Program-made: the position numbers and the translations under genes
In this document: positions 20,596 to 64,000 of the stretch, in pieces
How the letters are laid out: each line of letters begins with the position of its first letter
Position numbering within the stretch: position 1 is the first letter of the stretch
The notes under the pieces: model-generated
Told to the model about the DNA's origin: nothing
Database searches by the model: none
What the model saw: the letters and a program-made list of their open reading frames with translations, nothing else
NCBI GenBank assembly: GCA_964057225.1
Contig: OZ059895.1
Coordinates: 6,696,001 to 6,760,000, forward strand
Reading direction: 5' to 3'
Length of the DNA: 64,000 nucleotides
Origin: Auanema rhodensis
Taxonomy: Eukaryota > Animalia > Nematoda

Positions 20596-20666
<71 letters not shown>

Positions 20667-20705
20667 AGAGAGAGAAGGAGAGAGAGAGAAGGAGAGAGAG
20701 AGAAG

Positions 20706-20737
<32 letters not shown>

Positions 20738-20771
20738 GAGAGAGTGGGAGAGAGAGAAGGAGAGAGAGAGA

Positions 20772-20837
<66 letters not shown>

Positions 20838-22089
20838 AGAGAGAGAAGGAGAGAGAGAGAAGGAGAGAGAGAGGGAGAAAGAGAAAGGTAGAGAAAAAAG
20901 GTTAAAGTTGAGCTTGTCTGGTTGGTTCAAATGCAAAGTTTTAATTTGAAGTTTTCGCAAGTTTGAATGTTAATCGTATTTGCTTTATAATTGGTATTGT
21001 GTGAAAGATAAAGTCAAATGGAGGTATTGGTTTTTCATGATTGCCCCCTGTCTTCTATTTTCGATTGAAAGTCCTTTTCAAAATAGCACCAAAAGTTACA
21101 AAAGCATCACGTGTTTGCACTTGGTTGAGGGCTGAAGCGAGACTCAAATAGACAGCCAAATTTGAGAGAATATAGAAGACAAGAGAACGAAACTGTGTCT
21201 CTCTTTCTCTTTCTCTTCTGCTTTTCATTTCTTTCCTTGTTCAGTTTTCATTTTTAATTGTGCTGCTCAAGCAACGGAGAGGCGATTGCGAAGGTCAGAA
21301 CTGCTTATTCTTCGTGACTGTTTGCTTAGTTCTTGCTGTTGTTGTAGTAGTTATTTTCTCTTTTGTCATCCTTACATCACGCCTAGAGACATGAACATGG
21401 AATGAAATTTTCATTAATTTTAAATAAGAACAGAAGCCATTGTACCTGAAATACTCGTGTAGAATAAGAAAACGATAAAATTAGACACACAACCCTTGTC
21501 GAAAAAAATATATTTATGTTGCTGCAATCTTTTACAGGCTCTTTTATCCGATATATTGGCAACTGGTATTGAAGTTGGTGGAGCTAATTTACTTCGTATG
21601 ACTCCTGAGATTGCAAAAAAGCTTTATGGCGCACATGAAGGTGTGTAAGATAGTTGATTTGGAATTGTATTGAATCTGGCAATCTAACTGTTGTACTATA
21701 TTTGATCATTTCAGGAAAATTCTTTTACCCTCGCCTTGTACGACATGTTTGTAGGTTTGTGCTTTCTTTAATATCATAATTATGTAGAAATAAATCATCC
21801 TGTACTTATAATGAATTACAGCGGACCTGTAATTGCAATGCGGGTCCGTGGTGACGTACGCTCAGTTTTGGGAAGTAGCCGATTATGGCCATTGCCAGTA
21901 GAAACGAATGATTCATCTCAACCATCGGCGCAGCCCACAATTCGTCAACGGTTCAGTCTATCTGACGTGCGCAATGTTGCTCATACATCGGATTCTGAAG
22001 TAGCTGAACGAGAACTATCCATATTCGAGCCATTTGTTGCTGCCGAACCATTGCTTGAAAAGATAATGTCTGAAGTTGTTCTTGTATGA
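17752..22089 (+). CDS. NME6: Nucleoside diphosphate kinase, NME6-like (4 exons; first intron 17824-21537)
   Basis: Exons give WTLMLLKPD..., LYGAHE|GKFFYPRLVRHVC|SGPVIAMRV...TIRQRFSLSDVRNVAHTSDS (NDPK phospho-His motif). Stop at 22087-22089; AATAAA at 22255-22260. Confidence 0.88.
20513..20895. repeat. ~380-bp compound (GA)n polypurine tract in NME6 intron 1
   Basis: Nearly pure A/G on the + strand with (GA)n runs and recurring GAAGGAGAG interruptions. It explains the spurious RE-rich and SL-rich ORFs. Confidence 0.95.
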
Positions 22090-24586: not shown

Positions 24587-39604
<15,018 letters not shown>

Positions 39605-40275
39605 ATAAAGACCCACGTGGGCTTCACGTGGGTATCAAACAACCAACCAGTAAGACGAAAAGCGCTGGCTGGCGTCAAAGCGTTTATGCAAGACGCGAAA
39701 TTCGTAAGATGAAGAAACAGTGAAGAGCTGCTAGAAGATTTGCGGTACGCCGATGTACGTGATACGATTATGAATCTGACACGTGATTAGTTAGACGGCT
39801 CTCGAGAAACGATGAGAAAAATCTCGTTTCGAGGCACGCACTGGTTTGATGGCGTTCCGCTGCTCTGAAATTGGCTCAGTTGACGATAAAATAGCAGAAA
39901 GAGAGAGAATAAACGACATATGAACAAGAAACATTATAAAAGAGAGAACAAAAAAAAAACAAAAAAGATCAGGTAAAATGATGAGAGCATGAGAGGTTAA
40001 GGCGAAGTTTTGAAAACATTTTGAGATTGAGACCCGAGGTACAAAGCCTGAATGAAAGCCAAACACCGTGTGGACAGACTACGACGGTTTTTCGTGCAAT
40101 TCGCCAAATATAGATGGATAAGAAGGCGAGAGCAACGAGAAGAACGACGAGAAGAACGACGAGAAACAAACAAAGAAATCGTATAATGAAGAAGTCAATC
40201 ACGTCGAGACTAAGTAAAATGGTGAGACAGAGATGAAATGAACGAAGAGGAGAGATAAAGGGATAGAGAGAAAGT

Positions 40276-40278
<3 letters not shown>

Positions 40279-40350
<72 letters not shown>
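40279..40350. repeat. (GA)n microsatellite upstream of grh-1
   Basis: Seen directly in the sequence. Confidence 0.9.
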
Positions 40351-43700: not shown

Positions 43701-45712
43701 AAAATAAGTAATGTTCAATCATAACTTATCGTATTCGATATGTTGGCAGTCATCCAGCAAATATAACTCTTTAGTATTTCAGGGATTGATGGTTCACTTG
43801 ATAATTTAGACGAAAGCAAGGGCAAAAACGTCAGAATAATTGTCGACAATATGAAGATTACCGGAAAGAGGTGTACGTGCTTTTTCTTAGACTCATGAGG
43901 ATGAGCGCTAGGTTAAATTATGCACAGTTGAAAATAGTATTTGAAATCGGGTTAGGAAAGAAACAGGTAGCTAACTGGCTAGTCATATCAACTAATAATG
44001 CTAGTAGCCTTGACCGGCTCGTGATGATCATAATGATGGTTTGAAGCGTATGATGTCATAAGCTGAGCATTTAAAATTCGGCAGTTAAAGCATATAGTAA
44101 AGATAATTGAGATATAAAATAGTATTAAAAGATTGAAAGAATAAGATATATGTGAAAAAAGTAATGCAGCATATTCCAATTGTGCATAAAAATGGAAAGA
44201 AACATAAGATACGAATAATAATAACTATTTAAATGGATTAATTAACTATATGATTTTATAAAATTATATAGATTATTCAGTAGTATTAGAATGAGTTTTT
44301 TATTTGTCTCTAACAATAGAGCAAATTATGTTTGCTGGAATTGTTATGAAGATGGAAGTTTTAGGTAAAACACTAGGGAAGGTTCTGCAATTTTAACCAA
44401 AAATTCCAAATTTATGATAGGGTAGACCGAAGCGAATAGGACTGAGTGTAACCGGAAAGGGGTTACATAAAAATACGAGATAATGAAGTCTCGAGTGCTT
44501 TGGCCAAGTCTAGGGTCAGGAAGGATCAGCAATCAGGATCGGATCCAAAGAGTGTGATGAACTTTAATAGAGAGAGAGAGGAGAAGAAAAAAGAAAAAAT
44601 GAGAGAAAAACGAGAAAAAGAAAAAAGAATATAGTTAAGAAGAGGACTAGTACTGACCAACTGGGACTGGCTTTAGAGTCTGTTACAAGAGAAGTAAGGG
44701 AAATTGTTAGAGAAAAACAGTCATGATAGTGAAATAGATACAGTAGAGATATATACAAAAAAATTATCGAGATAGTGGAAGAGGCTGAGAGGGGGAGCGA
44801 AAAATATGGAAAGAAAGAGAAGAGGGAAAAAGAGATTGAGAGAGTGGATACAAAAGAGAAGAAGAGAAAGAAAGAGAGGCAAGATATATATATATATATA
44901 TATATATAACTGTAAGAAATAGAATTGAAATGAGAGAAACCAAAGATACAAATAAAAAGAGAGAGAGAGGGTCCGAGTGTAAGAAAAAGAGAGAGAGGGT
45001 TGTCATCAGTCGGGTAAGGGGCGAGGTCTACTGGCTGCAAACTCGAAAAACCAGACTGGCCGGGGGCCCAACACGACGCGAAGGGGTGCTATGTGTATGC
45101 ATCGGACCGAGTAGGCGGTCCTGTAGGCGTGGTCTTAGACACAGTCGGATGACGATAGTCGGACGAGACAGAAACACACGACGACGTCGCGGACGATTGT
45201 CGCAACGACTTCGGGGCGGTCCCGACACGAACATCGTAAAGATAGCGATTCAGAGTTAATCATGAAGAGAATCCAGAGAAAGAATAAGAAAGAAATAGAA
45301 AGAGATGAGAAAAATGCGGTGATACCTAATATATATACATTCATAAGAAGATATATTTTAGAAATTGAACAGATGCAGTTAAGAATAAGAACATAATTTT
45401 TGAAACGAATGCTAATATTTAAACTGTGGACATTCTAAAAACAATCAAACAAAAAAAACATTTTGAATGTTCTTCTGAAGAAGAATACGGTACACGTGCC
45501 ATTTGCCTTGGGGTATTCATCATCATCTTTGGTTTAATTACCCAAGTTTGAGGTATTTTGATGATTCAACAAGGGTTACACCTGATGTTGAACTAAATTT
45601 TGGAAAGCTCACTATATGTGAGCAACATAGATATTTCATCTTTCTGAAGATTCTGAAGCTCGTCTATCTCTTGAATGGAAACGTTTATTGTTCAGAAAAT
45701 CTCAGTCTAGAG

Positions 45713-45782
45713 TTTTGAATGTTCTTCTGAACAGGAATACGGTGCACGTGCCATTTGCCTTGAGGTATTCATCTTCATCTTT
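45713..45782 (+). promoter_or_regulatory. Candidate snRNA-type (PSE/SNAPc) promoter region of the SL1 unit (copy 2 shown)
   Basis: Nearly invariant GAATACGGTGCACGTGCCATTTGCC at about -48 to -24 in all units. The array's left edge retains exactly 70 nt upstream of the first SL1. Function is inferred from position only. Confidence 0.45.
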
Positions 45783-46034
45783 GGTTTAATTACCCAAGTT
45801 TGAGGTACTTTGATGATTCAACAAGGGTTACACCTGATGTTGAACTAAATTTTGGAAAGCTCACTATATGTTAGCAACATTGATATTTCATCTCTCTGAA
45901 GATTCGGAAGCTTGTCTATCTCTTTACCGGAAATGTTTATTATTCAGACAATCTCAGTCTAGAGTTTTGAATGTTCTTCTGAACAGGAATACGGTGCACG
46001 TGCCATTTGCCTTGAGGTATTCATCTTCATCTTT

Positions 46035-46129
46035 GGTTTAATTACCCAAGTTTGAGGTACTTTGATGATTCAACAAGGGTTACACCTGATGTTGAACTAA
46101 ATTTTGGAAAGCTCACTATATGTGAGCAA
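46035..46129 (+). ncRNA. sls-1: Representative intact SL1 RNA gene (copy 3)
   Basis: Leader 46035-46056, donor GT 46057-46058, Sm site ~46099-46108, terminal hairpin 46111-46127. The exact 3' end is approximate. Confidence 0.93.
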
Positions 46130-49100
46130 CATTGATATTCCATCTTTCTGAAGATTCTGAAGCTTGTCTATCTCTTGAATGGAAACGTTTATTGTTCAGA
46201 CAATCTCAGTCTAGAGTTTTGAATGTTTTTCTGAAGAAGAATACGGTGCACGTGCCATTTGCCCTGGAGTATTCATCTTCATCTTTGGTTTAATCACCCA
46301 AGTTTGAGGTACTTTGATAATTCAACAACGGTTACACCTGATGTTGAACTAAATTTTGGAAAGCTCACTATATGTGAGCAACATTGACATTTCATCTTTC
46401 TGAAGATTCTGAAGCTTGTCTATCTCTTGATCGGAAATGTTTATTGTTCAGACAATCTCAGTCTAGAGTTTTGAATGTTCTTCTGAACAGGAATACGGTG
46501 CACGTGCCATTTGCCTTGAGGTATTCATATTCATCTTTTGTTTAATTACCCAAGTTTGAGGTACTTTGATAATTCAACAACGGTTACACCTGATGTTGAA
46601 CTAAATTTTGGAAAGCTCACTATATGTGAGCAACATTGATATTCCATCTTTCTGAAGATTCTGAAGCTTGTCTATCTCTTGAATGGAAACGTTTATTGTT
46701 CAGACAATCTCAGTCTAGAGTTTTGAATGTTTTTCTGAAGAAGAATACGGTGCACGTGCCATTTGCCCTGGAGTATTCATCTTCATCTTTGGTTTAATCA
46801 CCCAAGTTTGAGGTACTTTGATAATTCAACAACGGTTACACCTGATGTTGAACTAAATTTTGGAAAGCTCACTATATGTGAGCAACATTGACATTTCATC
46901 TTTCTGAAGATTCTGAAGCTTGTCTATCTCTTGATCGGAAATGTTTATTGTTCAGACAATCTCAGTCTAGAGTTTTGAATGTTCTTCTGAACAGGAATAC
47001 GGTGCACGTGCCATTTGCCTTGAGGTATTCATATTCATCTTTTGTTTAATTACCCAAGTTTGAGGTACTTTGATAATTCAACAACGGTTACACCTGATGT
47101 TGAACTAAATTTTGGAAAGCTCACTATATGTGAGCAACATTGATATTCCATCTTTCTGAAGATTCTGAAGCTTGTCTATCTCTTGAATGGAAACGTTTAT
47201 TGTTCAGACAATCTCAGTCTAGAGTTTTGAATGTTTTTCTGAAGAAGAATACGGTGCACGTGCCATTTGCCCTGGAGTATTCATCTTCATCTTTGGTTTA
47301 ATCACCCAAGTTTGAGGTACTTTGATAATTCAACAACGGTTACACCTGATGTTGAACTAAATTTTGGAAAGCTCACTATATGTGAGCAACATTGATATTC
47401 CATCTTTCTGAAGATTCTGAAGCTTGTCTATCTCTTGATCGGAAATGTTTATTGTTCAGACAATCTCAGCCTAGAGTTTTGAATGTTTTTCTGAAGAAGA
47501 ATACGGTGCACGTGCCATTTGCCTTGAGGTATTCATATTCATCTTTGGTTTAATTACCCAAGTTTGAGGTACTTTGATAATTCAACAACGGTTACACCTG
47601 ATGTTGAACTAAATTTTGGAAAGCTCAGTATATGTGAGCAACATTGATATTCCATCTTTCTGAAGATTCTGAAGCTTGTCTATCTCTTGATCGGAAATGT
47701 TTATTGTTCAGACAATCTCAGCCTAGAGTTTTGAATGTTTTTCTGAAGAAGAATACGGTGCACGTGCCATTTGCCCTGGAGTATTCATCTTCATCTTTGG
47801 TTTAATTACCCAAGTTTGAGGTACTTTGATAATTCAACAAGGGTTACACCTGATGTTGAACTAAATTTTGGAAAGTTCACTATATGTGAGCAACATTGAT
47901 ATTTCATCTTTCTGCAGATTCTGAAGCTTGTCTATCTCTTGAATGGAAACGTTTATTGTTCAGAAAATCTCAGTCTAGAGTTTTGAATGTTTTTCTGAAG
48001 AAGAATACGGTGCACGTGCCATTTGCCCTGGAGTATTCATCTTCATCTTTGGTTTAATTACCCAAGTTTGAGGTACTTTGATAATTCAACAAGGGTTACA
48101 CCTGATGTTGAACTAAATTTTGGAATGTTCACTATATGTGAGCAACATTGATATTTCATCTTTCTGAAGATTCTGAAGCTTGTCTATCTCTTGAATGGAA
48201 ACGTTTATTGTTCAGAAAATCTCAGTCTAGAGTTTTGAATGTTTTTCTGAAGAAGAATACGGTGCACGTGCCATTTGCCCTGGAGTATTCATCTTCATCT
48301 TTGGTTTAATTACCCAAGTTTGAGGTACTTTGATAATTCAACAAGGGTTACACCTGATGTTGAACCAAATTTTGGAAAGCTCACTATATGTGAGCAACAT
48401 TGATATTCCATCTTTCTGAAGATTCTGAAGCTTGTCTATCTCTTTACCGGAAACTTTTATTGTTCAGAAAATCTCAGTCTAGAGTTTTGAATGTTTTTCT
48501 GAAGAAGAATACGGTGCACGTGCCATTTGCCCTGGAGTATTCATCTTCATCTTTGGTTTAATTACCCAAGTTTGAGATACTTTGATAATTCAACAAGGGT
48601 TACACCTGATGTTGAACCAAATTTTGGAAAGCTCACTATATGTGAGCAACATTGATATTCCATCTTTCTGAAGATTCTGAAGCTTGTCTATCTCTTTACC
48701 GGAAACTTTTATTGTTCAGAAAATCTCAGTCTAGAGTTTTGAATGTTTTTCTGAAGAAGAATACGGTGCACGTGCCATTTGCCTTGAGGTATTCATCTTC
48801 ATCTTTGGTTTAATTACCCAAGTTTGAGATACTTTGATAATTCAACAAGGGTTACACCTGATGTTGAACTAAATTTTGGAAAGCTCAGTATATGTGAGCA
48901 ACATTGATATTTCATCTTTCTGAAGATTCTGAAGCTTGTCTATCTCTTTACCGGAAACTTTTATTGTTCAGAAAATCTCAGTCTAGAGTTTTGAATGTTT
49001 TTCTGAAGAAGAATACGGTGCACGTGCCATTTGCCCTGGAGTATTCATCTTCATCTTTGGTTTAATTACCCAAGTTTGAGATACTTTGATAATTCAACAA

Positions 49101-52100
49101 GGGTTACACCTGATGTTGAACTAAATTTTGGAAAGTTCACTATATGTGAGCAACATTGATATTCCATCTTTCTGAAGATTCTGAAGCTTGTCTATCTCTT
49201 TACCGGAAACTTTTATTGTTCAGAAAATCTCAGTCTAGAGTTTTGAATGTTTTTCTGAAGAAGAATACGGTGCACGTGCCATTTGCCCTGGAGTATTCAT
49301 CTTCATCTTTGGTTTAATTACCCAAGTTTGAGATACTTTGATAATTCAACAAGGGTTACACCTGATGTTGAACTAAATTTTGGAAAGCTCAGTATATGTG
49401 AGCAACATTGATATTTCATCTTTCTGAAGATTCTGAAGCTTGTCTATCTCTTTACCGGAAACTTTTATTGTTCAGAAAATCTCAGTCTAGAGTTTTGAAT
49501 GTTTTTCTGAAGAAGAATACGGTGCACGTGCCATTTGCCCTGGAGTATTCATCTTCATCTTTGGTTTAATTACCCAAGTTTGAGATACTTTGATAATTCA
49601 ACAAGGGTTACACCTGATGTTGAACTAAATTTTGGAAAGTTCACTATATGTGAGCAACATTGATATTCCATCTTTCTGAAGATTCTGAAGCTTGTCTATC
49701 TCTTTACCGGAAACTTTTATTGTTCAGAAAATCTCAGTCTAGAGTTTTGAATGTTTTTCTGAAGAAGAATACGGTGCACGTGCCATTTGCCCTGGAGTAT
49801 TCATCTTCATCTTTGGTTTAATTACCCAAGTTTGAGATACTTTGATAATTCAACAAGGGTTACACCTGATGTTGAACTAAATTTTGGAAAGCTCAGTATA
49901 TGTGAGCAACATTGATATTTCATCTTTCTGAAGATTCTGAAGCTTGTCTATCTCTTGAATGGAAACGTTTATTGTTCAGAAAATCTCAGTCTAGAGTTTT
50001 GAATGTTTTTCTGAAGAAGAATACGGTGCACGTGCCATTTGCCCTGGAGTATTCATCTTCATCTTTGGTTTAATTACCCAAGTTTGAGGTACTTTGATAA
50101 TTCAACAAGGGTTACACCTGATGTTGAACTAAATTTTGGAAAGCTCAGTATATGTGAGCAACATTGATATTTCATCTCTCTGAAGAATCGGAAGCTTGTC
50201 TATCTCTTTACCGGAAACTTTTATTGTTCAGACAATATCAGCCTAGAGTTTTGAATGTTTTTCTGAAGAAGAATACGGTGCACGTGCCATTTGCCTTGAG
50301 GTATTCATCTTCATCTTTGGTTTAATTACCCAAGTTTGAGGTACTTTGATGATTCAACAAGGGTTACACCTGATGTTGAACTAAATTTTGGATAGCTCAC
50401 TATATGTGAGCAACATTGATATTCCATCTTTCTGAAGATTCTGAAGCTTGTCTATCTCTTTACCGGAAACTTTTATTGTTCAGACAATATCAGCCTAGAG
50501 TTTTGAATGTTTTTCTGAAGAAGAATACGGTGCACGTGCCATTTGCCTTGAGGTATTCATCTTCATCTTTGGTTTAATTACCCAAGTTTGAGGTACTTTG
50601 ATAATTCAACAACGGTTACACCGGATGTTGAACTAAATTTTGGAAAGCTCACTATATGTGAGCAACATTTATATTTCATCTTTCTGAAGATTCTGAAGCT
50701 TGTCTATCTCTTGAATGGAAACGTTTATTGTTCAGACAATCTCAGCCTAGAGTTTTGAATGTTTTTCTGAAGAAGAATACGGTGCACGTGCCATTTGCCT
50801 TGAGGTATTCATCTTCATCTTTGGTTTAATTACCCAAGTTTGAGGTACTTTGATAATTCAACAACGGTTACACCTGATGTTGAACTAAATTTTGGAAAGC
50901 TCACTATATGTGAGCAACATTGATATTTCATCTTTCTGAAGATTCTGAAACTTGTCTATCTCTTGACCGGAAATGTTTATTGTTCAGACAATCTCAGTCT
51001 AGAGTTTTGAATGTTTTTCTGAAGAAGAATACGGTGCACATGCCATTTGCCTTGAGGTATTCATCTTCATCTTTGGTTTAATTACCCAAGTTTGAGGTAC
51101 TTTGATAATTCAACAACGGTTACACCTGATGTTGAACTAAATTTTGGAAAGCTCACTATATGTGAGCAACATTGATATTCCATCTTTCTGAAGATTCTGA
51201 AGCTTGTCTATCTCTTGAATGGAAACGTTTATTGTTCAGACAATCTCAGCCTAGAGTTTTGAATGTTTTTCTGAAGAAGAATACGGTGCACGTGCCATTT
51301 GCCTTGAGGTATTCATCTTCATCTTTGGTTTAATTACCCAAGTTTGAGGTACTTTGATAATTCAACAACGGTTACACCTGATGTTGAACTAAATTTTGGA
51401 AAGCTCACTATATGTGAGCAACATTGATATTTCATCTTTCTGAAGATTCTGAAGCTTGTCTATCTCTTGACCGGAAATGTTTATTGTTCGGACAATCTCA
51501 GCCTAGAGTTTTGAATGTTTTTCTGAAGAAGAATACGGTGCACGTGCCATTTGCCTTGAGGTATTCATCTTCATCTTTGGTTTAATTACCCAAGTTTGAG
51601 GTACTTTGATAATTCAACAACGGTTACACCTGATGTTGAACTAAATTTTGGAAAGCTCACTATATGTGAGCAACATTGATATTTTATCTTTCTGAAGATT
51701 CTGAAGCTTGTCTATCTCTTGACCGGAAATGTTTATTGTTCGGACAATCTCAGCCTAGAGTTTTGAATGTTTTTCTGAAGAAGAATACGGTGCACGTGCC
51801 ATTTGCCTTGAGGTATTCATCTTCATCTTTGGTTTAATTACCCAAGTTTGAGGTACTTTGATAATTCAACAACGGTTACACCTGATGTTGAACTAAATTT
51901 TGGAAAGCTCACTATATGTGAGCAACATTGATATTCCATCTTTCTGAAGATTCTGAAGCTTGTCTATCTCTTGAATGGAAACGTTTATTGTTCAGACAAT
52001 CTCAGCCTAGAGTTTTGAATGTTTTTCTGAAGAAGAATACGGTGCACGTGCCATTTGCCTTGAGGTATTCATCTTCATCTTTGGTTTAATTACCCAAGTT

Positions 52101-55100
52101 TGAGATACTTTGATAATTCAACAAGGGTTACACCTGATGTTGAACTAAATTTTGGAAAGCTCAGTATATGTGAGCAACATTGATATTTCATCTTTCTGAA
52201 GATTCTGAAGCTTGTCTATCTCTTGAATGGAAACGTTTATTGTTCGGAAATCTCAGCCTAGAGTTTTGAATGTTTTTCTGAAGAAGAATACGGTGCACGT
52301 GCCATTTGCCTTGAGGTATTCATCTTCATCTTTGGTTTAATTACCCAAGTTTGAGGTACTTTGATGATTCAACAAGGGTTACACCTGATGTTGAACTAAA
52401 TTTTGGAAAGCTCACTATATGTGAGCAACATTGATATTTCATCTTTCTGAAGATTCTGAAGCTTGTCTATCTCTTGACCGGAAATGTTTATTGTTCAGAC
52501 AATCTCAGTCTAGAGTTTTGAATGTTTTTCTGAAGAAGAATACGGTGCACGTGCCATTTGCCTTGGGGTATTCAACTTCATTTTTGGTTTAATTACCCAA
52601 GTTTGAGGTACTTTGATAATTCAACAACAGTTACACCTGATGTTGAACTAAATTTTCGAAAGCTCACTATATGTGAGCAACATTGATATTTCATCTTTCT
52701 GAAGATTCTGAAGCTTGTCTATCTCTTGAATGGAAACGTTTATTGTTCAGACAATCTCAGCCTAGAGTTTTGAATGTTTTTCTGAAGAAGAATACGGTGC
52801 ACGTGCCATTTGCCTTGAGGTATTCATCTTCATTTTTGGTTTAATTACCCAAGTTTGAGGTACTTTGATGATTCAACAAGGGTTACACCTGATGTTGAAC
52901 TAAATTTTGGAAAGCTCACTATATGTGAGCAACATTTATATTTCATCTTTCTGAAGATTCTGAAGCTTGTCTATCTCTTGACCGGAAATGTTTATTGTTC
53001 AGACAATCTCAGTCTAGAGTTTTGAATGTTTTTCTGAAGAAGAATACGGTGCACGTGCCATTTGCCCTGGAGTATTCATCTTCATCTTTGGTTTAATTAC
53101 CCAAGTTTGAGGTACTTTGATAATTCAACAACGGTTACACCTGATGTTGAACTAAATTTTGGAAAGCTCACTATATGTGAGCAACATTGATATTTCATCT
53201 TTCTGAAGATTCTGAAGCTTGTCTATCTCTTGACCGGAAATGTTTATTGTTCAGACAATCTCAGTCTAGAGTTTTGAATGTTTTTCTGAAGAAGAATACG
53301 GTGCACGTGCCATTTGCCCTGGAGTATTCATCTTCATCTTTGGTTTAATTACCCAAGTTTGAGGTACTTTGATAATTCAACAACGGTTACACCTGATGTT
53401 GAACTAAATTTTGGAAAGCTCACTATATGTGAGCAACATTGATATTTCATCTTTCTGAAGATTCTGAAGCTTGTCTATCTCTTGAATGGAAACGTTTATT
53501 GTTCGGAAATCTCAGCCTAGAGTTTTGAATGTTTTTCTGAAGAAGAATACGGTGCACGTGCCATTTGCCCTGGAGTATTCATCTTCATCTTTGGTTTAAT
53601 TACCCAAGTTTGAGGTACTTTGATAATTCAACAACGGTTACACCTGATGTTGAACTAAATTTTGGAAAGCTCACTATATGTGAGCAACATTGATATATCA
53701 TCTTTCTGAAGATTCTGAAGCTTGTCTATCTCTTGAATGGAAACGTTTATTGTTCGGAAATCTCAGCCTAGAGTTTTGAATGTTTTTCTGAAGAAGAATA
53801 CGGTGCACGTGCCATTTGCCTTGAGGTATTCATCTTCATCTTTGGTTTAATTACCCAAGTTTGAGGTACTTTGATAATTCAACAACGGTTACACCTGATG
53901 TTGAACTAAATTTTCGAAAGCTCACTATATGTGAGCAACATTGATATTTCATCTTTCTGAAGATTCTGAAGCTTGTCTATCTCTTGAATGGAAACGTTTA
54001 TTGTTCGGAAATCTCAGCCTAGAGTTTTGAATGTTTTTCTGAAGAAGAATACGGTGCACGTGCCATTTGCCTTGAGGTATTCATCTTCATCTTTGGTTTA
54101 ATTACCCAAGTTTGAGGTACTTTGATAATTCAACAACGGTTACACCTGATGTTGAACTAAATTTTGGAAAGCTCACTATATGTGAGCAACATTGATATAT
54201 CATCTTTCTGAAGATTCTGAAGCTTGTCTATCTCTTGAATGGAAACGTTTATTGTTCGGAAATCTCAGCCTAGAGTTTTGAATGTTTTTCTGAAGAAGAA
54301 TACGGTGCACGTGCCATTTGCCCTGGAGTATTCATCTTCATCTTTGGTTTAATTACCCAAGTTTGAGGTACTTTGATAATTCAACAACGGTTACACCTGA
54401 TGTTGAACTAAATTTTGGAAAGCTCACTATATGTGAGCAACATTGATATTTCATCTTTCTGAAGATTCTGAAGCTTGTCTATCTCTTGACCGGAAATGTT
54501 TATTGTTCAGACAATCTCAGTCTAGAGTTTTGAATGTTTTTCTGAAGAAGAATACGGTGCACGTGCCATTTGCCCTGGAGTATTCATCTTCATCTTTGGT
54601 TTAATTACCCAAGTTTGAGGTACTTTGATAATTCAACAACAGTTACACCTGATGTTGAACTAAATTTTCGAAAGCTCACTATATGTGAGCAACATTGATA
54701 TTTCATCTTTCTGAAGATTCTGAAGCTTGTCTATCTCTTGAATGGAAACGTTTATTGTTCGGAAATCTCAGCCTAGAGTTTTGAATGTTTTTCTGAAGAA
54801 GAATACGGTGCACGTGCCATTTGCCCTGGAGTATTCATCTTCATCTTTGGTTTAATTACCCAAGTTTGAGGTACTTTGATAATTCAACAACGGTTACACC
54901 TGATGTTGAACTAAATTTTGGAAAGCTCACTATATGTGAGCAACATTGATATATCATCTTTCTGAAGATTCTGAAGCTTGTCTATCTCTTGAATGGAAAC
55001 GTTTATTGTTCGGAAATCTCAGCCTAGAGTTTTGAATGTTTTTCTGAAGAAGAATACGGTGCACGTGCCATTTGCCTTGAGGTATTCATCTTCATCTTTG

Positions 55101-58100
55101 GTTTAATTACCCAAGTTTGAGGTACTTTGATAATTCAACAACGGTTACACCTGATGTTGAACTAAATTTTCGAAAGCTCACTATATGTGAGCAACATTGA
55201 TATTTCATCTTTCTGAAGATTCTGAAGCTTGTCTATCTCTTGAATGGAAACGTTTATTGTTCGGAAATCTCAGCCTAGAGTTTTGAATGTTTTTCTGAAG
55301 AAGAATACGGTGCACGTGCCATTTGCCTTGAGGTATTCATCTTCATCTTTGGTTTAATTACCCAAGTTTGAGGTACTTTGATAATTCAACAACGGTTACA
55401 CCTGATGTTGAACTAAATTTTGGAAAGCTCACTATATGTGAGCAACATTGATATATCATCTTTCTGAAGATTCTGAAGCTTGTCTATCTCTTGAATGGAA
55501 ACGTTTATTGTTCGGAAATCTCAGCCTAGAGTTTTGAATGTTTTTCTGAAGAAGAATACGGTGCACGTGCCATTTGCCCTGGAGTATTCATCTTCATCTT
55601 TGGTTTAATTACCCAAGTTTGAGGTACTTTGATAATTCAACAACGGTTACACCTGATGTTGAACTAAATTTTGGAAAGCTCACTATATGTGAGCAACATT
55701 GATATTTCATCTTTCTGAAGACTCTGAAGCTTGTCTATCTCTTGAATGGAAACGTTTATTGTTCAGACAATCTCAGCCTAGAGTTTTGAATGTTTTTCTG
55801 AAGAAGAATACGGTGCACGTGCCATTTGCCTTGAGGTATTCATCTTCATCTTTGGTTTGATTACCCAAGTTTGAGGTACTTTGATGATTCAACAAGGGTT
55901 ACACCTGATGTTGAACTAAATTTTGGAAAGCTCACTATATGTGAGCAACATTGATATTTCATCTTTCTGAAGATTCTGAAGCTTGTCTATCTCTTGACCC
56001 AAAATGTTCATTGTTGAGACAATCTCAGTCTAGAGTTTTGAAATTTCTTCTGAACAGGAATACGGTGCACGTGCCATTTGCCCTGGAGTATTCATCTTCA
56101 TCTTTGGTTTAATTACCCAAGTTTGAGGTACTTTGATAATTCAACAACGGTTACACCTGATGTTGAACTAAATTTTGGAAAGCTCACTATATGTGAGCAA
56201 CATTGATATTTCATCTTTCTGAAGATTCTGAAGCTTGTCTATCTCTTGACCGGAAATGTTTATTGTTCAGACAATCTCAGTCTAGAGTTTTGAATGTTTT
56301 TCTGAAGAAGAATACGGTGCACGTGCCATTTGCCTTGGGGTATTCAACTTCTTTTTTGGTTTAATTACCCAAGTTTGAGGTACTTTGATGATTCAACAAG
56401 GGTTACACCTGATGTTGAACTAAATTTTGGAAAGCTCACTATATGTGAGCAACATTGATATTTCATCTCTCTGAAGATTCGGAAGCTTGTCTATCTCTTG
56501 ACCGGAAATGTTTATTGTTCAGACAATCTCAGTCAGGAGTTTTGAATGTTCTTCTGAACAGGAATACGGTGCACGTGCCATTTGCCTTGAGGTATTCATC
56601 TTCATCTTTGGTTTAATTACCCAAGTTTGAGGTACTTTGATAATTCAACAACGGTTACACCTGATGTTGAACTAAATTTTGGAAAGCTCACTATATGTGA
56701 GCAACATTGATATTTCATCTTTCTGAAGATTCTGAAGCTTGTCTATCTCTTGACCGGAAATGTTTATTGTTCAGACAATCTCAGCCTAGAGTTTTGAATG
56801 TTTTTCTGAAGAAGAATACGGTGCACGTGCCATTTGCCTTGAGGTATTCATCTTCATCTTTGGTTTAATTACCCAAGTTTGAGGTACTTTGATGATTCAA
56901 CAAGGGTTACACCTGATGTTGAACTAAATTTTGGAAAGCTCACTATATGTGAGCAACATTGATATTTCATCTTTCTGAAGATTCTGAAGCTTGTCTATCT
57001 CTTGACCGGAAATGTTTATTGTTCAGACAATCTCAGTCTAGAGTTTTGAATGTTTTTCTGAAGAAGAATACGGTGCACGTGCCATTTGCCTTGGGGTATT
57101 CAACTTCATTTTTGGTTTAATTACCCAAGTTTGAGGTACTTTGATGATTCAACAAGGGTTACACCTGATGTTGAACTAAATTTTGGAAAGCTCACTATAT
57201 GTGAGCAACATTTATATTTCATCTTTCTGAAGATTCTGAAGCTTGTCTATCTCTTGACCGGAAATGTTTATTGTTCAGACAATCTCAGCCTAGAGTTTTG
57301 AATGTTTTTCTGAAGAAGAATACGGTGCACGTGCCATTTGCCTTGAGGTATTCATCTTCATCTTTGGTTTAATTACCCAAGTTTGAGGTACTTTGATAAT
57401 TCAACAACGGTTACACCTGATGTTGAACTAAATTTTGGAAAGCTCACTATATGTGAGCAACATTGATATTTCATCTTTCTGAAGATTCTGAAGCTTGTCT
57501 ATCTCTTGACCGGAAATGTTTATTGTTCAGACAATCTCAGTCTAGAGTTTTGAATGTTTTTCTGAAGAAGAATACGGTGCACGTGCCATTTGCCCTGGAG
57601 TATTCATCTTCATCTTTGGTTTAATTACCCAAGTTTGAGGTACTTTGATAATTCAACAACGGTTACACCTGATGTTGAACTAAATTTTGGAAAGCTCACT
57701 ATATGTGAGCAACATTGATATTTCTTCTCTCTGAACATTCGGAAGCTTGTCTATCTCTTGACCGGAAATGGTTATTGTTCAGACAATCTCAGTCTAGAGT
57801 TTTGAATATTCTTATGAACAGGAATACGGTGCACGTGCCATTTGCCTTGGGGTATTCAACTTCATTTTTGGTTTAATTACCCAAGTTTGAGGTACTTTGA
57901 TGATTCAACAACGGTTACACCTGATGTTGAACTAAATTTTGGAAAGCTCACTATATGTGAGCAACATTGATATTCCATCTTTCTGAAGATTCTGAAGCTT
58001 GTCTATCTCTTGACCGGAAATGTTTATTGTTCAGACAATCTCAGTCTAGAGTTTTGAATGTTTTTCTGAAGAAGAATACGGTGCACGTGCCATTTGCCTT

Positions 58101-61100
58101 GGGGTATTCAACTTCATTTTTGGTTTAATTACCCAAGTTTGAGGTACTTTGATGATTCAACAACGGTTACACCTGATGTTGAACTAAATTTTGGAAAGCT
58201 CACTATATGTGAGCAACATTGATATTCCATCTTTCTGAAGATTCTGAAGCTTGTCTATCTCTTGAATGGAAACGTTTATTGTTCAGACAATCTCAGCCTA
58301 GAGTTTTGAATGTTTTTCTGAAGAAGAATACGGTGCACGTGCCATTTGCCTTGAGGTATTCATCTTCATCTTTGGTTTAATTACCCAAGTTTGAGGTACT
58401 TTGATGATTCAACAAGGGTTACACCTGATGTTGAACTAAATTTTGGAAAGCTCACTATATGTGAGCAACATTGATATTTCATCTTTCTGAAGATTCTGAA
58501 GCTTGTCTATCTCTTGACCGGAAATGTTTATTGTTCAGACAATCTCAGTCTAGAGTTTTGAATGTTTTTCTGAAGAAGAATACGGTGCACGTGCCATTTG
58601 CCTTGGGGTATTCAACTTCATTTTTGGTTTAATTACCCAAGTTTGAGGTACTTTGATGATTCAACAAGGGTTACACCTGATGTTGAACTAAATTTTGGAA
58701 AGCTCACTATATGTGAGCAACATTTATATTTCATCTTTCTGAAGATTCTGAAGCTTGTCTATCTCTTGACCGGAAATGTTTATTGTTCAGACAATCTCAG
58801 TCTAGAGTTTTGAATGTTTTTCTGAAGAAGAATACGGTGCACGTGCCATTTGCCCTGGAGTATTCATCTTCATCTTTGGTTTAATTACCCAAGTTTGAGG
58901 TACTTTGATAATTCAACAACAGTTACACCTGATGTTGAACTAAATTTTCGAAAGCTCACTATATGTGAGCAACATTGATATTTCATCTTTCTGAAGATTC
59001 TGAAGCTTGTCTATCTCTTGAATGGAAACGTTTATTGTTCGGAAATCTCAGCCTAGAGTTTTGAATGTTTTTCTGAAGAAGAATACGGTGCACGTGCCAT
59101 TTGCCCTGGAGTATTCATCTTCATCTTTGGTTTAATTACCCAAGTTTGAGGTACTTTGATAATTCAACAACGGTTACACCTGATGTTGAACTAAATTTTG
59201 GAAAGCTCACTATATGTGAGCAACATTGATATATCATCTTTCTGAAGATTCTGAAGCTTGTCTATCTCTTGAATGGAAACGTTTATTGTTCGGAAATCTC
59301 AGCCTAGAGTTTTGAATGTTTTTCTGAAGAAGAATACGGTGCACGTGCCATTTGCCTTGAGGTATTCATCTTCATCTTTGGTTTAATTACCCAAGTTTGA
59401 GGTACTTTGATAATTCAACAACGGTTACACCTGATGTTGAACTAAATTTTCGAAAGCTCACTATATGTGAGCAACATTGATATTTCATCTTTCTGAAGAT
59501 TCTGAAGCTTGTCTATCTCTTGAATGGAAACGTTTATTGTTCGGAAATCTCAGCCTAGAGTTTTGAATGTTTTTCTGAAGAAGAATACGGTGCACGTGCC
59601 ATTTGCCTTGAGGTATTCATCTTCATCTTTGGTTTAATTACCCAAGTTTGAGGTACTTTGATAATTCAACAACGGTTACACCTGATGTTGAACTAAATTT
59701 TGGAAAGCTCACTATATGTGAGCAACATTGATATATCATCTTTCTGAAGATTCTGAAGCTTGTCTATCTCTTGAATGGAAACGTTTATTGTTCGGAAATC
59801 TCAGCCTAGAGTTTTGAATGTTTTTCTGAAGAAGAATACGGTGCACGTGCCATTTGCCCTGGAGTATTCATCTTCATCTTTGGTTTAATTACCCAAGTTT
59901 GAGGTACTTTGATAATTCAACAACGGTTACACCTGATGTTGAACTAAATTTTGGAAAGCTCACTATATGTGAGCAACATTGATATTTCATCTTTCTGAAG
60001 ACTCTGAAGCTTGTCTATCTCTTGAATGGAAACGTTTATTGTTCAGACAATCTCAGCCTAGAGTTTTGAATGTTTTTCTGAAGAAGAATACGGTGCACGT
60101 GCCATTTGCCTTGAGGTATTCATCTTCATCTTTGGTTTGATTACCCAAGTTTGAGGTACTTTGATGATTCAACAAGGGTTACACCTGATGTTGAACTAAA
60201 TTTTGGAAAGCTCACTATATGTGAGCAACATTGATATTTCATCTTTCTGAAGATTCTGAAGCTTGTCTATCTCTTGACCGGAAATGTTTATTGTTCAGAC
60301 AATCTCAGTCTAGAGTTTTGAATGTTTTTCTGAAGAAGAATACGGTGCACGTGCCATTTGCCTTGGGGTATTCAACTTCTTTTTTGGTTTAATTACCCAA
60401 GTTTGAGGTACTTTGATGATTCAACAAGGGTTACACCTGATGTTGAACTAAATTTTGGAAAGCTCACTATATGTGAGCAACATTGATATTTCATCTCTCT
60501 GAAGATTCGGAAGCTTGTCTATCTCTTGACCGGAAATGTTTATTGTTCAGACAATCTCAGTCAGGAGTTTTGAATGTTCTTCTGAACAGGAATACGGTGC
60601 ACGTGCCATTTGCCTTGAGGTATTCATCTTCATCTTTGGTTTAATTACCCAAGTTTGAGGTACTTTGATAATTCAACAACGGTTACACCTGATGTTGAAC
60701 TAAATTTTGGAAAGCTCACTATATGTGAGCAACATTGATATTTCATCTTTCTGAAGATTCTGAAGCTTGTCTATCTCTTGACCGGAAATGTTTATTGTTC
60801 AGACAATCTCAGCCTAGAGTTTTGAATGTTTTTCTGAAGAAGAATACGGTGCACGTGCCATTTGCCTTGAGGTATTCATCTTCATCTTTGGTTTAATTAC
60901 CCAAGTTTGAGGTACTTTGATAATTCAACAACGGTTACACCTGATGTTGAACTAAATTTTGGAAAGCTCACTATATGTGAGCAACATTGATATTTCATCT
61001 TTCTGAAGATTCTGAAGCTTGTCTATCTCTTGACCGGAAATGTTTATTGTTCAGACAATCTCAGTCTAGAGTTTTGAATGTTTTTCTGAAGAAGAATACG

Positions 61101-64000
61101 GTGCACGTGCCATTTGCCTTGGGGTATTCAACTTCATTTTTGGTTTAATTACCCAAGTTTGAGGTACTTTGATGATTCAACAAGGGTTACACCTGATGTT
61201 GAACTAAATTTTGGAAAGCTCACTATATGTGAGCAACATTTATATTTCATCTTTCTGAAGATTCTGAAGCTTGTCTATCTCTTGACCGGAAATGTTTATT
61301 GTTCAGACAATCTCAGCCTAGAGTTTTGAATGTTTTTCTGAAGAAGAATACGGTGCACGTGCCATTTGCCTTGAGGTATTCATCTTCATCTTTGGTTTAA
61401 TTACCCAAGTTTGAGGTACTTTGATAATTCAACAACGGTTACACCTGATGTTGAACTAAATTTTGGAAAGCTCACTATATGTGAGCAACATTGATATTTC
61501 ATCTTTCTGAAGATTCTGAAGCTTGTCTATCTCTTGACCGGAAATGTTTATTGTTCAGACAATCTCAGTCTAGAGTTTTGAATGTTTTTCTGAAGAAGAA
61601 TACGGTGCACGTGCCATTTGCCCTGGAGTATTCATCTTCATCTTTGGTTTAATTACCCAAGTTTGAGGTACTTTGATAATTCAACAACGGTTACACCTGA
61701 TGTTGAACTAAATTTTGGAAAGCTCACTATATGTGAGCAACATTGATATTTCTTCTCTCTGAACATTCGGAAGCTTGTCTATCTCTTGACCGGAAATGGT
61801 TATTGTTCAGACAATCTCAGTCTAGAGTTTTGAATATTCTTCTGAACAGGAATACGGTGCACGTGCCATTTGCCTTGGGGTATTCAACTTCATTTTTGGT
61901 TTAATTACCCAAGTTTGAGGTACTTTGATGATTCAACAACGGTTACACCTGATGTTGAACTAAATTTTGGAAAGCTCACTATATGTGAGCAACATTGATA
62001 TTCCATCTTTCTGAAGATTCTGAAGCTTGTCTATCTCTTGACCGGAAATGTTTATTGTTCAGACAATCTCAGTCTAGAGTTTTGAATGTTTTTCTGAAGA
62101 AGAATACGGTGCACGTGCCATTTGCCTTGGGGTATTCAACTTCATTTTTGGTTTAATTACCCAAGTTTGAGGTACTTTGATGATTCAACAACGGTTACAC
62201 CTGATGTTGAACTAAATTTTGGAAAGCTCACTATATGTGAGCAACATTGATATTCCATCTTTCTGAAGATTCTGAAGCTTGTCTATCTCTTGAATGGAAA
62301 CGTTTATTGTTCAGACAATCTCAGCCTAGAGTTTTGAATGTTTTTCTGAAGAAGAATACGGTGCACGTGCCATTTGCCTTGAGGTATTCATCTTCATCTT
62401 TGGTTTAATTACCCAAGTTTGAGGTACTTTGATGATTCAACAAGGGTTACACCTGATGTTGAACTAAATTTTGGAAAGCTCACTATATGTGAGCAACATT
62501 GATATTTCATCTTTCTGAAGATTCTGAAGCTTGTCTATCTCTTGACCGGAAATGTTTATTGTTCAGACAATCTCAGTCTAGAGTTTTGAATGTTTTTCTG
62601 AAGAAGAATACGGTGCACGTGCCATTTGCCTTGGGGTATTCAACTTCATTTTTGGTTTAATTACCCAAGTTTGAGGTACTTTGATGATTCAACAAGGGTT
62701 ACACCTGATGTTGAACTAAATTTTGGAAAGCTCACTATATGTGAGCAACATTTATATTTCATCTTTCTGAAGATTCTGAAGCTTGTCTATCTCTTGAGCG
62801 GAAATGTTTATTGTTCAGACAATCTCAGTCTAGAGTTTTGAATGTTTTTCTGAAGAAGAATACGGTGCACGTGCCATTTGCCCTGGAGTATTCATCTTCA
62901 TCTTTGGTTTAATTACCCAAGTTTGAGGTACTTTGATAATTCAACAACAGTTACACCTGATGTTGAACTAAATTTTCGAAAGCTCACTATATGTGAGCAA
63001 CATTGATATTTCATCTTTCTGAAGATTCTGAAGCTTGTCTATCTCTTGACCGGAAATGTTTATTGTTCAGACAATCTCAGTCTAGAGTTTTGAATGTTTT
63101 TCTGAAGAAGAATACGGTGCACGTGCCATTTGCCCTGGAGTATTCATCTTCATCTTTGGTTTAATTACCCAAGTTTGAGGTACTTTGATAATTCAACAAC
63201 AGTTACACCTGATGTTGAACTAAATTTTCGAAAGCTCACTATATGTGAGCAACATTGATATTTCATCTTTCTGAAGATTCTGAAGCTTGTCTATCTCTTG
63301 AATGGAAACGTTTATTGTTCGGAAATCTCAACCTAGAGTTTTGAATGTTTTTCTGAAGAAGAATACGGTGCACGTGCCATTTGCCTTGGGGTATTCATCT
63401 TCATCTTTGGTTTAATTACCCAAGTTTGAGGTACTTTGATAATTCAACAACGGTTACACCTGATGTTGAACTAAATTTTGGAAAGCTCACTATATGTGAG
63501 CAACATTGATATTTCTTCTCTCTGAACATTCGGAAGCTTGTCTATCTCTTGAATGGAAACGTTTATTGTTCAGACAATCTCAGCCTAGAGTTTTGAATGT
63601 TTTTCTGAAGAAGAATACGGTGCACGTGCCATTTGCCTTGGGGTGTTCATCTTCATCTTTGGTTTAATTACCCAAGTTTGAGGTACTTTGATAATTCAAC
63701 AACGGTTACACCTGATGTTGAACTAAATTTTCGAAAGCTCACTATATGTGAGCAACATTGATATTTCATCTTTCTGAAGATTCTGAAGCTTGTCTATCTC
63801 TTGAATGGAAACGTTTATTGTTCGGAAATCTCAACCTAGAGTTTTGAATGTTTTTCTGAAGAAGAATACGGTGCACGTGCCATTTGCCTTGGGGTATTCA
63901 TCTTCATCTTTGGTTTAATTACCCAAGTTTGAGGTACTTTGATGATTCAACAAGGGTTACACCTGATGTTGAACTAAATTTTGGAAAGCTCACTATATGT

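What the first reader, a model, noticed from the sequence alone, without database searches (positions are those of the whole stretch)
45461..64000. The 'satellite' is an ultra-compact, 5S-free tandem array of SL1 spliced-leader RNA genes
Seen: at least 74 head-to-tail 252-bp units, each with the exact SL1 22-mer, GT donor, stem II, Sm site AAATTTTGGA and stem III. The ~157-nt spacer shows no 5S rRNA similarity on either strand. Established: in C. elegans and many other nematodes SL1 genes sit with 5S rRNA in a roughly 1-kb repeat. Inference: SL1 has been uncoupled from 5S, and promoter, gene and 3'-end signal are squeezed into 252 bp, little more than one nucleosome repeat. Repeat maskers would hide this as a satellite.
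Basis: partly seen in the sequence, partly recalled or inferred. Interest (0 to 1): 0.8.

Follow-up and report, generated by a model that had tools for sequence, protein, structure and literature searches.

The report
Tandem SL1 spliced-leader gene array
The apparent 252-base satellite is a very long head-to-tail array of intact-looking genes for the roundworm SL1 trans-splicing RNA with no 5S gene, in the worm Auanema rhodense. The layout is known from other nematodes, so this is a large new example, with an unusual half-promoter.

Summary
Window 45461-64000 holds 73.6 copies of a 252-bp unit. Each unit has a full-length SL1 RNA gene; 67 of 74 leaders are exact, and there is no 5S gene.

- **Extent.** The array runs about 358 kb (C3:6,741,461 to about 7,099,700), roughly 1,150-1,200 units, and is broken by Maverick-like insertions.
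- **Organism.** The genome is the Auanema rhodense germline assembly. The preprint describing it does not mention SL1.
- **Position.** The array sits inside a gene-rich block that is probably kept in body cells. The 5S arrays lie 5 Mb away in the gene-free central block.
- **Promoter.** The unit has only the 3' half of this genome's snRNA promoter element (PSE), at -47. Across 315 units, that half-element and the gene almost lack common variants, while the spacer varies freely. This suggests a working gene array (about 0.65).
- **Rival.** It could be a mostly silent SL1-derived satellite (about 0.25). Smaller SL1 clusters elsewhere carry a full PSE.
- **Novelty.** SL1 unlinked from 5S is published for Pristionchus and Oscheius, and an SL-gene satellite for Meloidogyne. 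This is a new member of a known kind.
- **Earlier scan reports.** The scan already reported this same array in a window 184 kb further on, and other SL1 arrays in this genome.

The parts
45461..64000 (+). Left end of the 252-bp SL1 gene array (73.6 units). The array continues past the window to about C3:7,099,700.
   Evidence: Continuation: (loci L038, L039, L041).
47799..47820 (+). 22-nt SL1 leader (exon) of an example unit
   Evidence: Exact match; sequence read
47821..47894 (+). Intron-like part of the example SL RNA: GT donor at 47821-47822, stem II about 47833-47860, Sm site AAATTTTGGA at 47863-47872, stem III about 47875-47891
   Evidence: Rfam alignment; folds
47895..48003 (+). Spacer with no detectable relative in the other SL1 unit types, no 5S similarity and no notable RNA structure. 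It is the most variable part of the unit.
48004..48020 (+). Half promoter element plus adjacent box, AATACGGTGCACGTGCC, 47 nt before the next SL1 start. ATACGGTG matches the 3' half of the PSE found upstream of the U1, U2 and SL2 genes.
   Evidence: Present in all 74 units, 72 of them exact. Position and match to the PSE. No common variants in 315 units.
46287..47546 (+). Array-edge higher-order repeat with one-base leader variants (GGTTTAATCACCC... and TGTTTAAT...) in alternating units
30820..38069 (-). Flank, not part of the array: CP2-domain exons of the genome's only grainyhead-type gene, about 7 kb from the array start

Best explanation
This is a working, 5S-free tandem array of about 1,150-1,200 canonical SL1 spliced-leader RNA genes in Auanema rhodense, and probably the main source of SL1 RNA.

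Each 252-bp unit has three parts:
- a 17-nt upstream box at -47 to -31, which is the 3' half of the snRNA promoter element plus a CACGTG box;
- a gene of about 96-100 nt: 22-nt leader, GT donor, stem II, free Sm site and stem III;
- about 105 nt of unconstrained spacer.

Inferred mechanism: SNAPc and RNA polymerase II start at G+1. The RNA is capped, bound by Sm proteins, and donates its leader to pre-mRNAs. High copy number may compensate for a weak half-promoter.

The array lies in gene-rich DNA that, by the published architecture of this genome, is kept in body cells. The 5S arrays lie in the central block, which is discarded.

Shown: the anatomy, copy number, absence of 5S, pattern of constraint and genomic position. 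Inferred: transcription, use in trans-splicing, and retention in the soma.
For: - Full-length SL1 model matches at 52-62 bits. All 51 best SL1 matches in the genome lie in this array.
- About 1,077 of the genome's 1,254 exact leader+GTA copies are here.
- The RNA folds into the canonical three stems with a free Sm site.
- Stems II and III are kept through changes on both sides between array types.
- In 315 units, rare variants are evenly spread (25/96 gene sites against 27/96 spacer sites). Common variants (>=5%) are depleted in the gene (4/96 against 21/96, Fisher p=0.0004) and absent from the -47..-31 box (0/17, p=0.04).
- The box is present in 74/74 window units, with ATACG at the same distance (-46) as in the U1, U2 and SL2 genes.
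- Similarity to the other SL1 unit types covers exactly -47..+97.
- Kinase and helicase genes flank the array at 6.57 and 7.21 Mb, and the only grainyhead gene is 7 kb away.
- No break-site-like motif lies beside the array.
Against: - The 5' half of the promoter element (CACCC...) is missing. A weight matrix built from 12 U1/U2/SL2 sites scores those sites 16-28 bits when each is left out in turn. It scores the small SL1 cluster 23 bits, the 291-bp type 18, the 340-bp type 11-12, and this unit below 3.
- That 5' half is the part conserved across nematodes (PMC6436959).
- No RNA data could be examined.
- This genome amplifies many small-RNA genes in tandem, so amplification alone does not show need (preprint 10.64898/2026.08.27.747507).
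- The array tolerates large transposon insertions.
- Depletion of common variants is an array-level signal from related copies, not independent events.
- The two central break sites on this chromosome were not located directly.
Confidence: 0.65

Rival explanations
1. SL1-derived satellite. An amplicon running from the middle of the promoter to about 200 nt past the gene start was copied about 1,200 times. Because it lost the 5' half of the promoter element it is mostly or wholly silent. Canonical SL1 RNA would come from the roughly 150 genes of the 340-bp arrays and the small cluster at C3:14.1-14.8 Mb, which keep a full element.
For: - The promoter matrix score is below 3 bits, against 11-23 bits for the other canonical SL1 loci.
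- Similarity to those loci stops at -47, inside the element.
- TTCTGAAGA-like repeats lie on both sides of the junction (sequence read).
- The genome is rich in tandem amplifications of small-RNA genes.
- Array edges carry decayed leaders.
- In Meloidogyne the satellite-borne SL1b is the less used variant (PMC9673304).
Against: - An inert satellite should vary evenly along the unit. Instead, common variants avoid the gene and the -47..-31 box, while rare variants are even.
- The array holds about 86% of all exact canonical leaders.
- Its gene scores are the best in the genome.
Confidence: 0.25
2. Germline-restricted repeat. The array belongs to the DNA that A. rhodense discards from body cells at the 12-cell stage, so it could act, if at all, only in the germline and the very early embryo.
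For: - 61% of this genome, mostly tandem repeats with units of 167-504 nt and including small-RNA gene arrays, is eliminated (10.64898/2026.08.27.747507).
Against: - Conserved genes flank the array closely on both sides. The gene-free central block lies at about 9.3-13.9 Mb.
- The preprint reports only four break sites per autosome, at transitions between gene-rich and repeat-rich DNA.
- No break-site-like motif occurs in the window or in the 15 kb to the right of the array.
- The right flank is non-repetitive.
Confidence: 0.07

Closest known systems
Meloidogyne MelSat01 (INC satellite), equal to the Mi-SL1b spliced-leader gene satellite (PMC9673304)
   Same: A short tandem unit that contains a whole SL RNA gene. 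There is no 5S in the description. Variability is lower in the leader and Sm region than in the rest of the unit. It was classed as a satellite until the SL gene was recognised.
   Different: A different nematode clade. This array carries the canonical SL1 leader rather than a variant. Promoter anatomy was not analysed in Meloidogyne. Transcription was shown there (moderate) and could not be tested here.
C. elegans and C. briggsae 5S-SL1 repeat of about 1 kb (about 110 copies)
   Same: A tandem array of SL1 RNA genes with the same 22-nt leader, Sm site and three-stem RNA.
   Different: No 5S gene in the unit. The unit is a quarter of the size. Copy number is about ten times higher. 5S lies in separate arrays 5 Mb away.
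Pristionchus pacificus and Oscheius tipulae SL1 genes unlinked from 5S (PMC4138322, PMC7986045, 10.1101/2020.09.04.283127)
   Same: Rhabditid nematodes in which SL1 and 5S are not clustered together. P. pacificus has hundreds of SL1 genes (at least 619).
   Different: Those papers report no single megascale short-unit array. Here about 1,200 genes sit in one 358-kb block.
[quoted passage not shown]
   Same: [quoted passage not shown]
   Different: That is a different gene class with a different half-motif sequence, and it depends on piRNA-specific factors. The resemblance is in the way it works only and was not tested.

Membership tests
Nematode SL1 RNA gene (Rfam RF00198) | 22-nt SL1 leader followed at once by a GT splice donor | tested here: met
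   67/74 exact in the window. In 315 units, 293 are exact and 307 have GT.
Nematode SL1 RNA gene (Rfam RF00198) | Three stem-loops with a single-stranded Sm site (AAUUUUGG) between stems II and III | tested here: met
   Folds. Sm site in 288/315 units. Compensatory pairs between array types.
Nematode SL1 RNA gene (Rfam RF00198) | Score at or above Rfam's curated gathering cut-off (75 bits) | tested here: not met
   52-62 bits, with a full-length alignment and E about 1e-8. Every SL1 locus in this genome fails the cut-off, including those with a full promoter. The cut-off is a curation threshold, not a biological feature.
Nematode SL1 RNA gene (Rfam RF00198) | snRNA-type promoter element (PSE) about 45-60 nt upstream | tested here: inconclusive
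   The 3' half is present at the right distance and is constrained. The 5' half is absent and that stretch is unconstrained.
Nematode SL1 RNA gene (Rfam RF00198) | Transcribed, trimethylguanosine-capped, and donates its leader in trans-splicing | not testable with these tools
   No RNA data can be searched by nucleotide sequence here.
5S-linked SL1 repeat (Caenorhabditis, Brugia and Ascaris type) | A 5S rRNA gene in the same repeat unit | tested here: not met
   No 5S match at E<=10 in the units. The 5S arrays lack SL1.
SL-gene satellite (Meloidogyne MelSat01 type) | A short tandem unit holding a whole SL gene, with the gene less variable than the rest of the unit | tested here: met
   Described in PMC9673304.
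Germline-restricted tandem repeats of A. rhodense (programmed DNA elimination) | Lies in a gene-poor repeat block bounded by break sites | tested here: not met
   Conserved genes lie within 7 kb on the left and 112 kb on the right. The gene-free block is at 9.3-13.9 Mb. No break-site-like motif at the array borders. Read depth was not available.

The most novel reading that the evidence does not exclude
The array is transcribed from a half promoter. [quoted passage not shown] This would parallel the way piRNA promoters arose. In addition, in a worm that discards 61% of its genome, the SL1 mega-array was kept in body cells while the 5S arrays, its partners in Caenorhabditis, went to germline-only DNA. 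Uncoupling would then have let the two gene families meet different fates.
Probability: 0.25. Interest if true: 0.6.

Novelty: new member of a known kind. Interest (0 to 1): 0.36.

Why it matters
- **Annotation.** A block that repeat maskers and a default Rfam scan treat as satellite holds most of this worm's canonical SL1 genes. The preprint that describes the genome does not mention SL1, so its annotation and counts of 'satellite' DNA would change.
- **Promoter.** The within-array variant pattern marks a 17-nt half-promoter and the gene as the only constrained parts of the unit. This gives a small, directly testable minimal SL1 promoter.
- **Elimination.** The contrast with the 5S arrays offers a natural case for asking which repeated RNA genes a DNA-eliminating nematode keeps in its body cells.
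- **What is not new.** 5S-free SL1 genes and SL-gene satellites are already published.

Tried and rejected
- **5S in the spacer:** none at E<=10.
- **A second small RNA or structure in the spacer:** fold z-scores were 0.07 and -1.6, and only weak snoRNA-like chance matches appeared.
- **A better SL1 gene elsewhere:** none scores higher.
- **SL1 relics in the 5S arrays:** none.
- **Break site next to the array:**
  - Palindrome scans and GGC..GCC or TAGGC..GCCTA scans of the window and flanks found nothing convincing.
  - One palindrome at window 32965 is unique in the genome, so I dropped it.
- A motif family recovered from the genome (25 hits against 0-1 in the control) has no member in the window or in the 15 kb to the right.
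- **Genome letters:** I could not fetch U4, U5 and U6 promoters, the second half of the array or the central break sites.
- **Flanking ORFs:** Pfam scans gave nothing useful.
- **Preprint supplements:** none are held as text.
- **Not done:** checking whether the canonical leader appears on this species' mRNAs. It would not tell this array apart from the other canonical loci.
Full report
**Observation**

- Tandem Repeats Finder reports a single array at 45461-64000: period 252, 73.6 copies, 96% matches.
- The SL1 22-mer occurs 67 times exactly, always on the + strand, against none expected. Seven further units carry a one-base variant. Most of these lie in a two-unit higher-order repeat at the left edge.
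- The Rfam SL1 model aligns over its whole length to the units at 52-53.5 bits (E about 2e-8). This is below the curated cut-off of 75, so a default scan of the window returns nothing.
- No 5S match appears in three units, even at E<=10 on either strand.

**Extent**

- The window is G000:C3:6,696,001-6,760,000.
- Units of the same type run on to C3:7,099,529. Non-repetitive DNA follows.
- The span is about 358 kb, but it is interrupted. At C3:6,840,956 the array gives way to an element encoding a type-B DNA polymerase and a phlebovirus-G2-like glycoprotein, which looks like a Maverick/Polinton.
- From genome-wide pattern counts, about 1,077 of the 1,254 exact 'leader+GTA' copies lie in this array (1,175 forward and 79 reverse; about 150 belong to other unit types).
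- 93% of sampled units are exact, which implies roughly 1,150-1,200 units.

**Organism**

- That paper's AT-1 probe occurs 138,553 times at 176-bp spacing, starting at the beginning of contig 1. I take the identification as settled.
- The preprint reports that 61% of the germline genome is discarded from body cells. This DNA is mostly tandem repeats at both ends and in the centre of each autosome, and it includes 5S, tRNA and U2 arrays.
- The preprint's text never mentions SL1 or spliced leaders.

**Other small-RNA genes in the genome**

- 5S genes (100-110 bits) lie at C3:12.09-13.47 Mb in 529/928-bp units. These units carry 5S only, with no SL1 leader even at three mismatches.
- SL1 genes occur in at least three further layouts:
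  - 340/341-bp units at C3:14.12 and 14.13 Mb;
  - a ten-gene cluster at C3:14.83 Mb;
  - 291-bp units with a variant leader (...AAGTTAGAG) on contig 8, with 2,077 exact copies.
- U1, U2, U4 and U5 genes are also in tandem arrays.
- All 51 best SL1 model matches in the genome fall in the 252-bp array (53.6-61.8 bits). The other types score 39-57 bits.

**Promoter**

- The U1, U2 and SL2 genes share an upstream element, CACCCrTAnnAnATACGrtG, with ATACG at -44 to -47.
- I built a weight matrix from 12 distinct sites. It scores those sites 16-28 bits when each is left out in turn. It scores the ten-gene SL1 cluster 23 bits, the 291-bp type 18, the 340-bp type 11-12, and the 252-bp unit below 3.
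- The reason for the low score is clear. The unit has ATACGGTGCA at exactly -46, but TTCTG where CACCC should be.
- Similarity between this unit and the 340-bp type covers only -47..-1 (70% identity, z 3.1) and the gene (76-100%). It is at chance level upstream of -48 and downstream of +97.
- The unit is therefore about 145 bp of SL1-gene-derived sequence, starting in the middle of the promoter element, plus about 105 bp of unrelated spacer.
- Beltran et al. [quoted passage not shown] They also report that piRNA promoters work with the 3' half alone.

**Constraint**

- I collected 315 distinct units from the window and from loci along the array.
- Rare variants (<1%) are evenly spread: 25 of 96 gene sites against 27 of 96 spacer sites. 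Mutation input therefore looks uniform.
- Common variants (>=5%) occupy 4 of 96 gene sites against 21 of 96 spacer sites (Fisher p=0.0004).
- The 17-nt box AATACGGTGCACGTGCC at -47..-31 has no common variant (0/17, p=0.04) and a mean minor frequency of 0.8%. It is present in all 74 window units.
- The stretch where the 5' half should lie (-60..-48) is as variable as the spacer (8.2%).
- Stems II and III are kept through changes on both sides between array types. The RNA folds into the canonical three stems with a free Sm site.
- These patterns fit array-level purifying selection on the gene and a half-promoter. The copies are related, so the counts are not independent events.

**Position relative to DNA elimination**

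- Kinase and helicase exon matches on C3 fall only in 6.12-9.29 Mb and 13.97-18.49 Mb. This matches the preprint's two gene-rich retained blocks per autosome.
- With the break sites near 5.0 and 19.05 Mb suggested by earlier notes, the retained blocks would run from about 5.0 to 9.4 Mb and from about 13.9 to 19.05 Mb. They total about 9.5 of 24.0 Mb, so about 60% would be eliminated, close to the reported 61%. One search recovered the 19.05-Mb site.
- The array (6.74-7.10 Mb) lies well inside the left block. The genome's only CP2/grainyhead gene is 7 kb to its left, and kinase genes lie at 6.57 and 7.21 Mb.
- A break-site-like motif family (25 hits against 0-1 in the control) has no member in the window or in the 15 kb to the right of the array.
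- I infer that the array is retained in body cells, while the 5S arrays at 12.09-13.47 Mb sit in the discarded central block.
- This rests on gene positions. I had no read depth, and I did not locate the two central break sites.

**Comparison with what is known**

- SL1 genes unlinked from 5S are published for P. pacificus (187 loci, later at least 619; PMC4138322, PMC7986045) and for O. tipulae.
- A short-unit satellite that is really an SL gene, with lower variability in the gene and moderate transcription, is published for Meloidogyne as MelSat01 (PMC9673304).
- The finding is therefore a new and very large member of a known kind.
- What seems unreported:
  - the recognition of SL1 arrays in A. 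rhodense;
  - the half-promoter with its constraint signature;
  - the likely opposite fates of the SL1 and 5S arrays under DNA elimination.

**Verdict**

- It is most likely (about 0.65) a functional SL1 gene array driven by a half-promoter.
- The main rival (about 0.25) is a largely silent SL1-derived satellite, with SL1 RNA supplied by the roughly 150 genes that keep a full promoter.
- A germline-only fate is unlikely (about 0.07).
- The scan had already reported this same array in a window 184 kb further on, and the other SL1 arrays of this genome.

Noticed in passing
L040:956-10000 (C3:6,840,956 onward): The array is interrupted by a Maverick/Polinton-like element. It has ORFs with a type-B DNA polymerase domain (PF03175) and a phlebovirus G2-like fusion glycoprotein domain (PF07245).
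   Followed up: partly
G000 C3:15.86-16.08 Mb (U1, 727-bp units); C1:10.96-11.28 Mb (U2, about 2.46-kb units); C4:15.50-15.56 Mb (U4, 490-bp units); C8:10.43-10.53 Mb (U5, 371-bp units): All the spliceosomal snRNA genes searched are also in long tandem arrays, so SL1 amplification is part of a genome-wide habit.
   Followed up: partly
G000 C8:12.92-13.19 Mb and beyond (locus L075): A 291-bp-unit array of SL1-type genes carries the leader variant ...AAGTTAGAG: 2,077 exact copies on both strands. They have a good promoter element (18 bits) but a weaker SL1 model score (39-40 bits).
   Followed up: partly
G000 C3:15,668,594-15,668,676; also C5:8,677,170-8,677,264 and C6:15,352,732-15,352,855: Short tandem clusters at 29-bp spacing of a telomere-seeded, partly palindromic motif (consensus TAGGCAGTGGATAAGCCTAAGCCTA). 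It is probably the published break-site signal or spare copies of it. The C3:15.67-Mb cluster lies inside a gene-rich block.
   Followed up: partly
Upstream of the U1, U2 and SL2 genes (loci L033-L037, L042-L044, L052-L059), about -60 to -40: This genome's snRNA promoter element is a near-palindrome: CACC(C)rTAT ... ATACGGTG. The reverse complement of the 3' half resembles the 5' half.
   Followed up: no
L079 (C3:14,116,001-14,122,000, minus strand) and L080 (C3:14,132,001-14,141,000, plus strand): Two 340/341-bp SL1 arrays face in opposite directions about 14 kb apart, like the arms of a large inverted duplication. I did not read the centre.
   Followed up: no
window 20514-20884, 25325-25445, 36531-36629, 40246-40350: Long GA/AG/TC dinucleotide microsatellites are scattered through the gene-bearing left part of the window.
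   Followed up: no
window 32951-32979: A 29-nt near-perfect palindrome, GAATATTTACCCTTCTAGGGTAAAAATTC, lies in an intron-like region of the grainyhead locus. It is unique in the genome, so it is not the break-site motif.
   Followed up: yes
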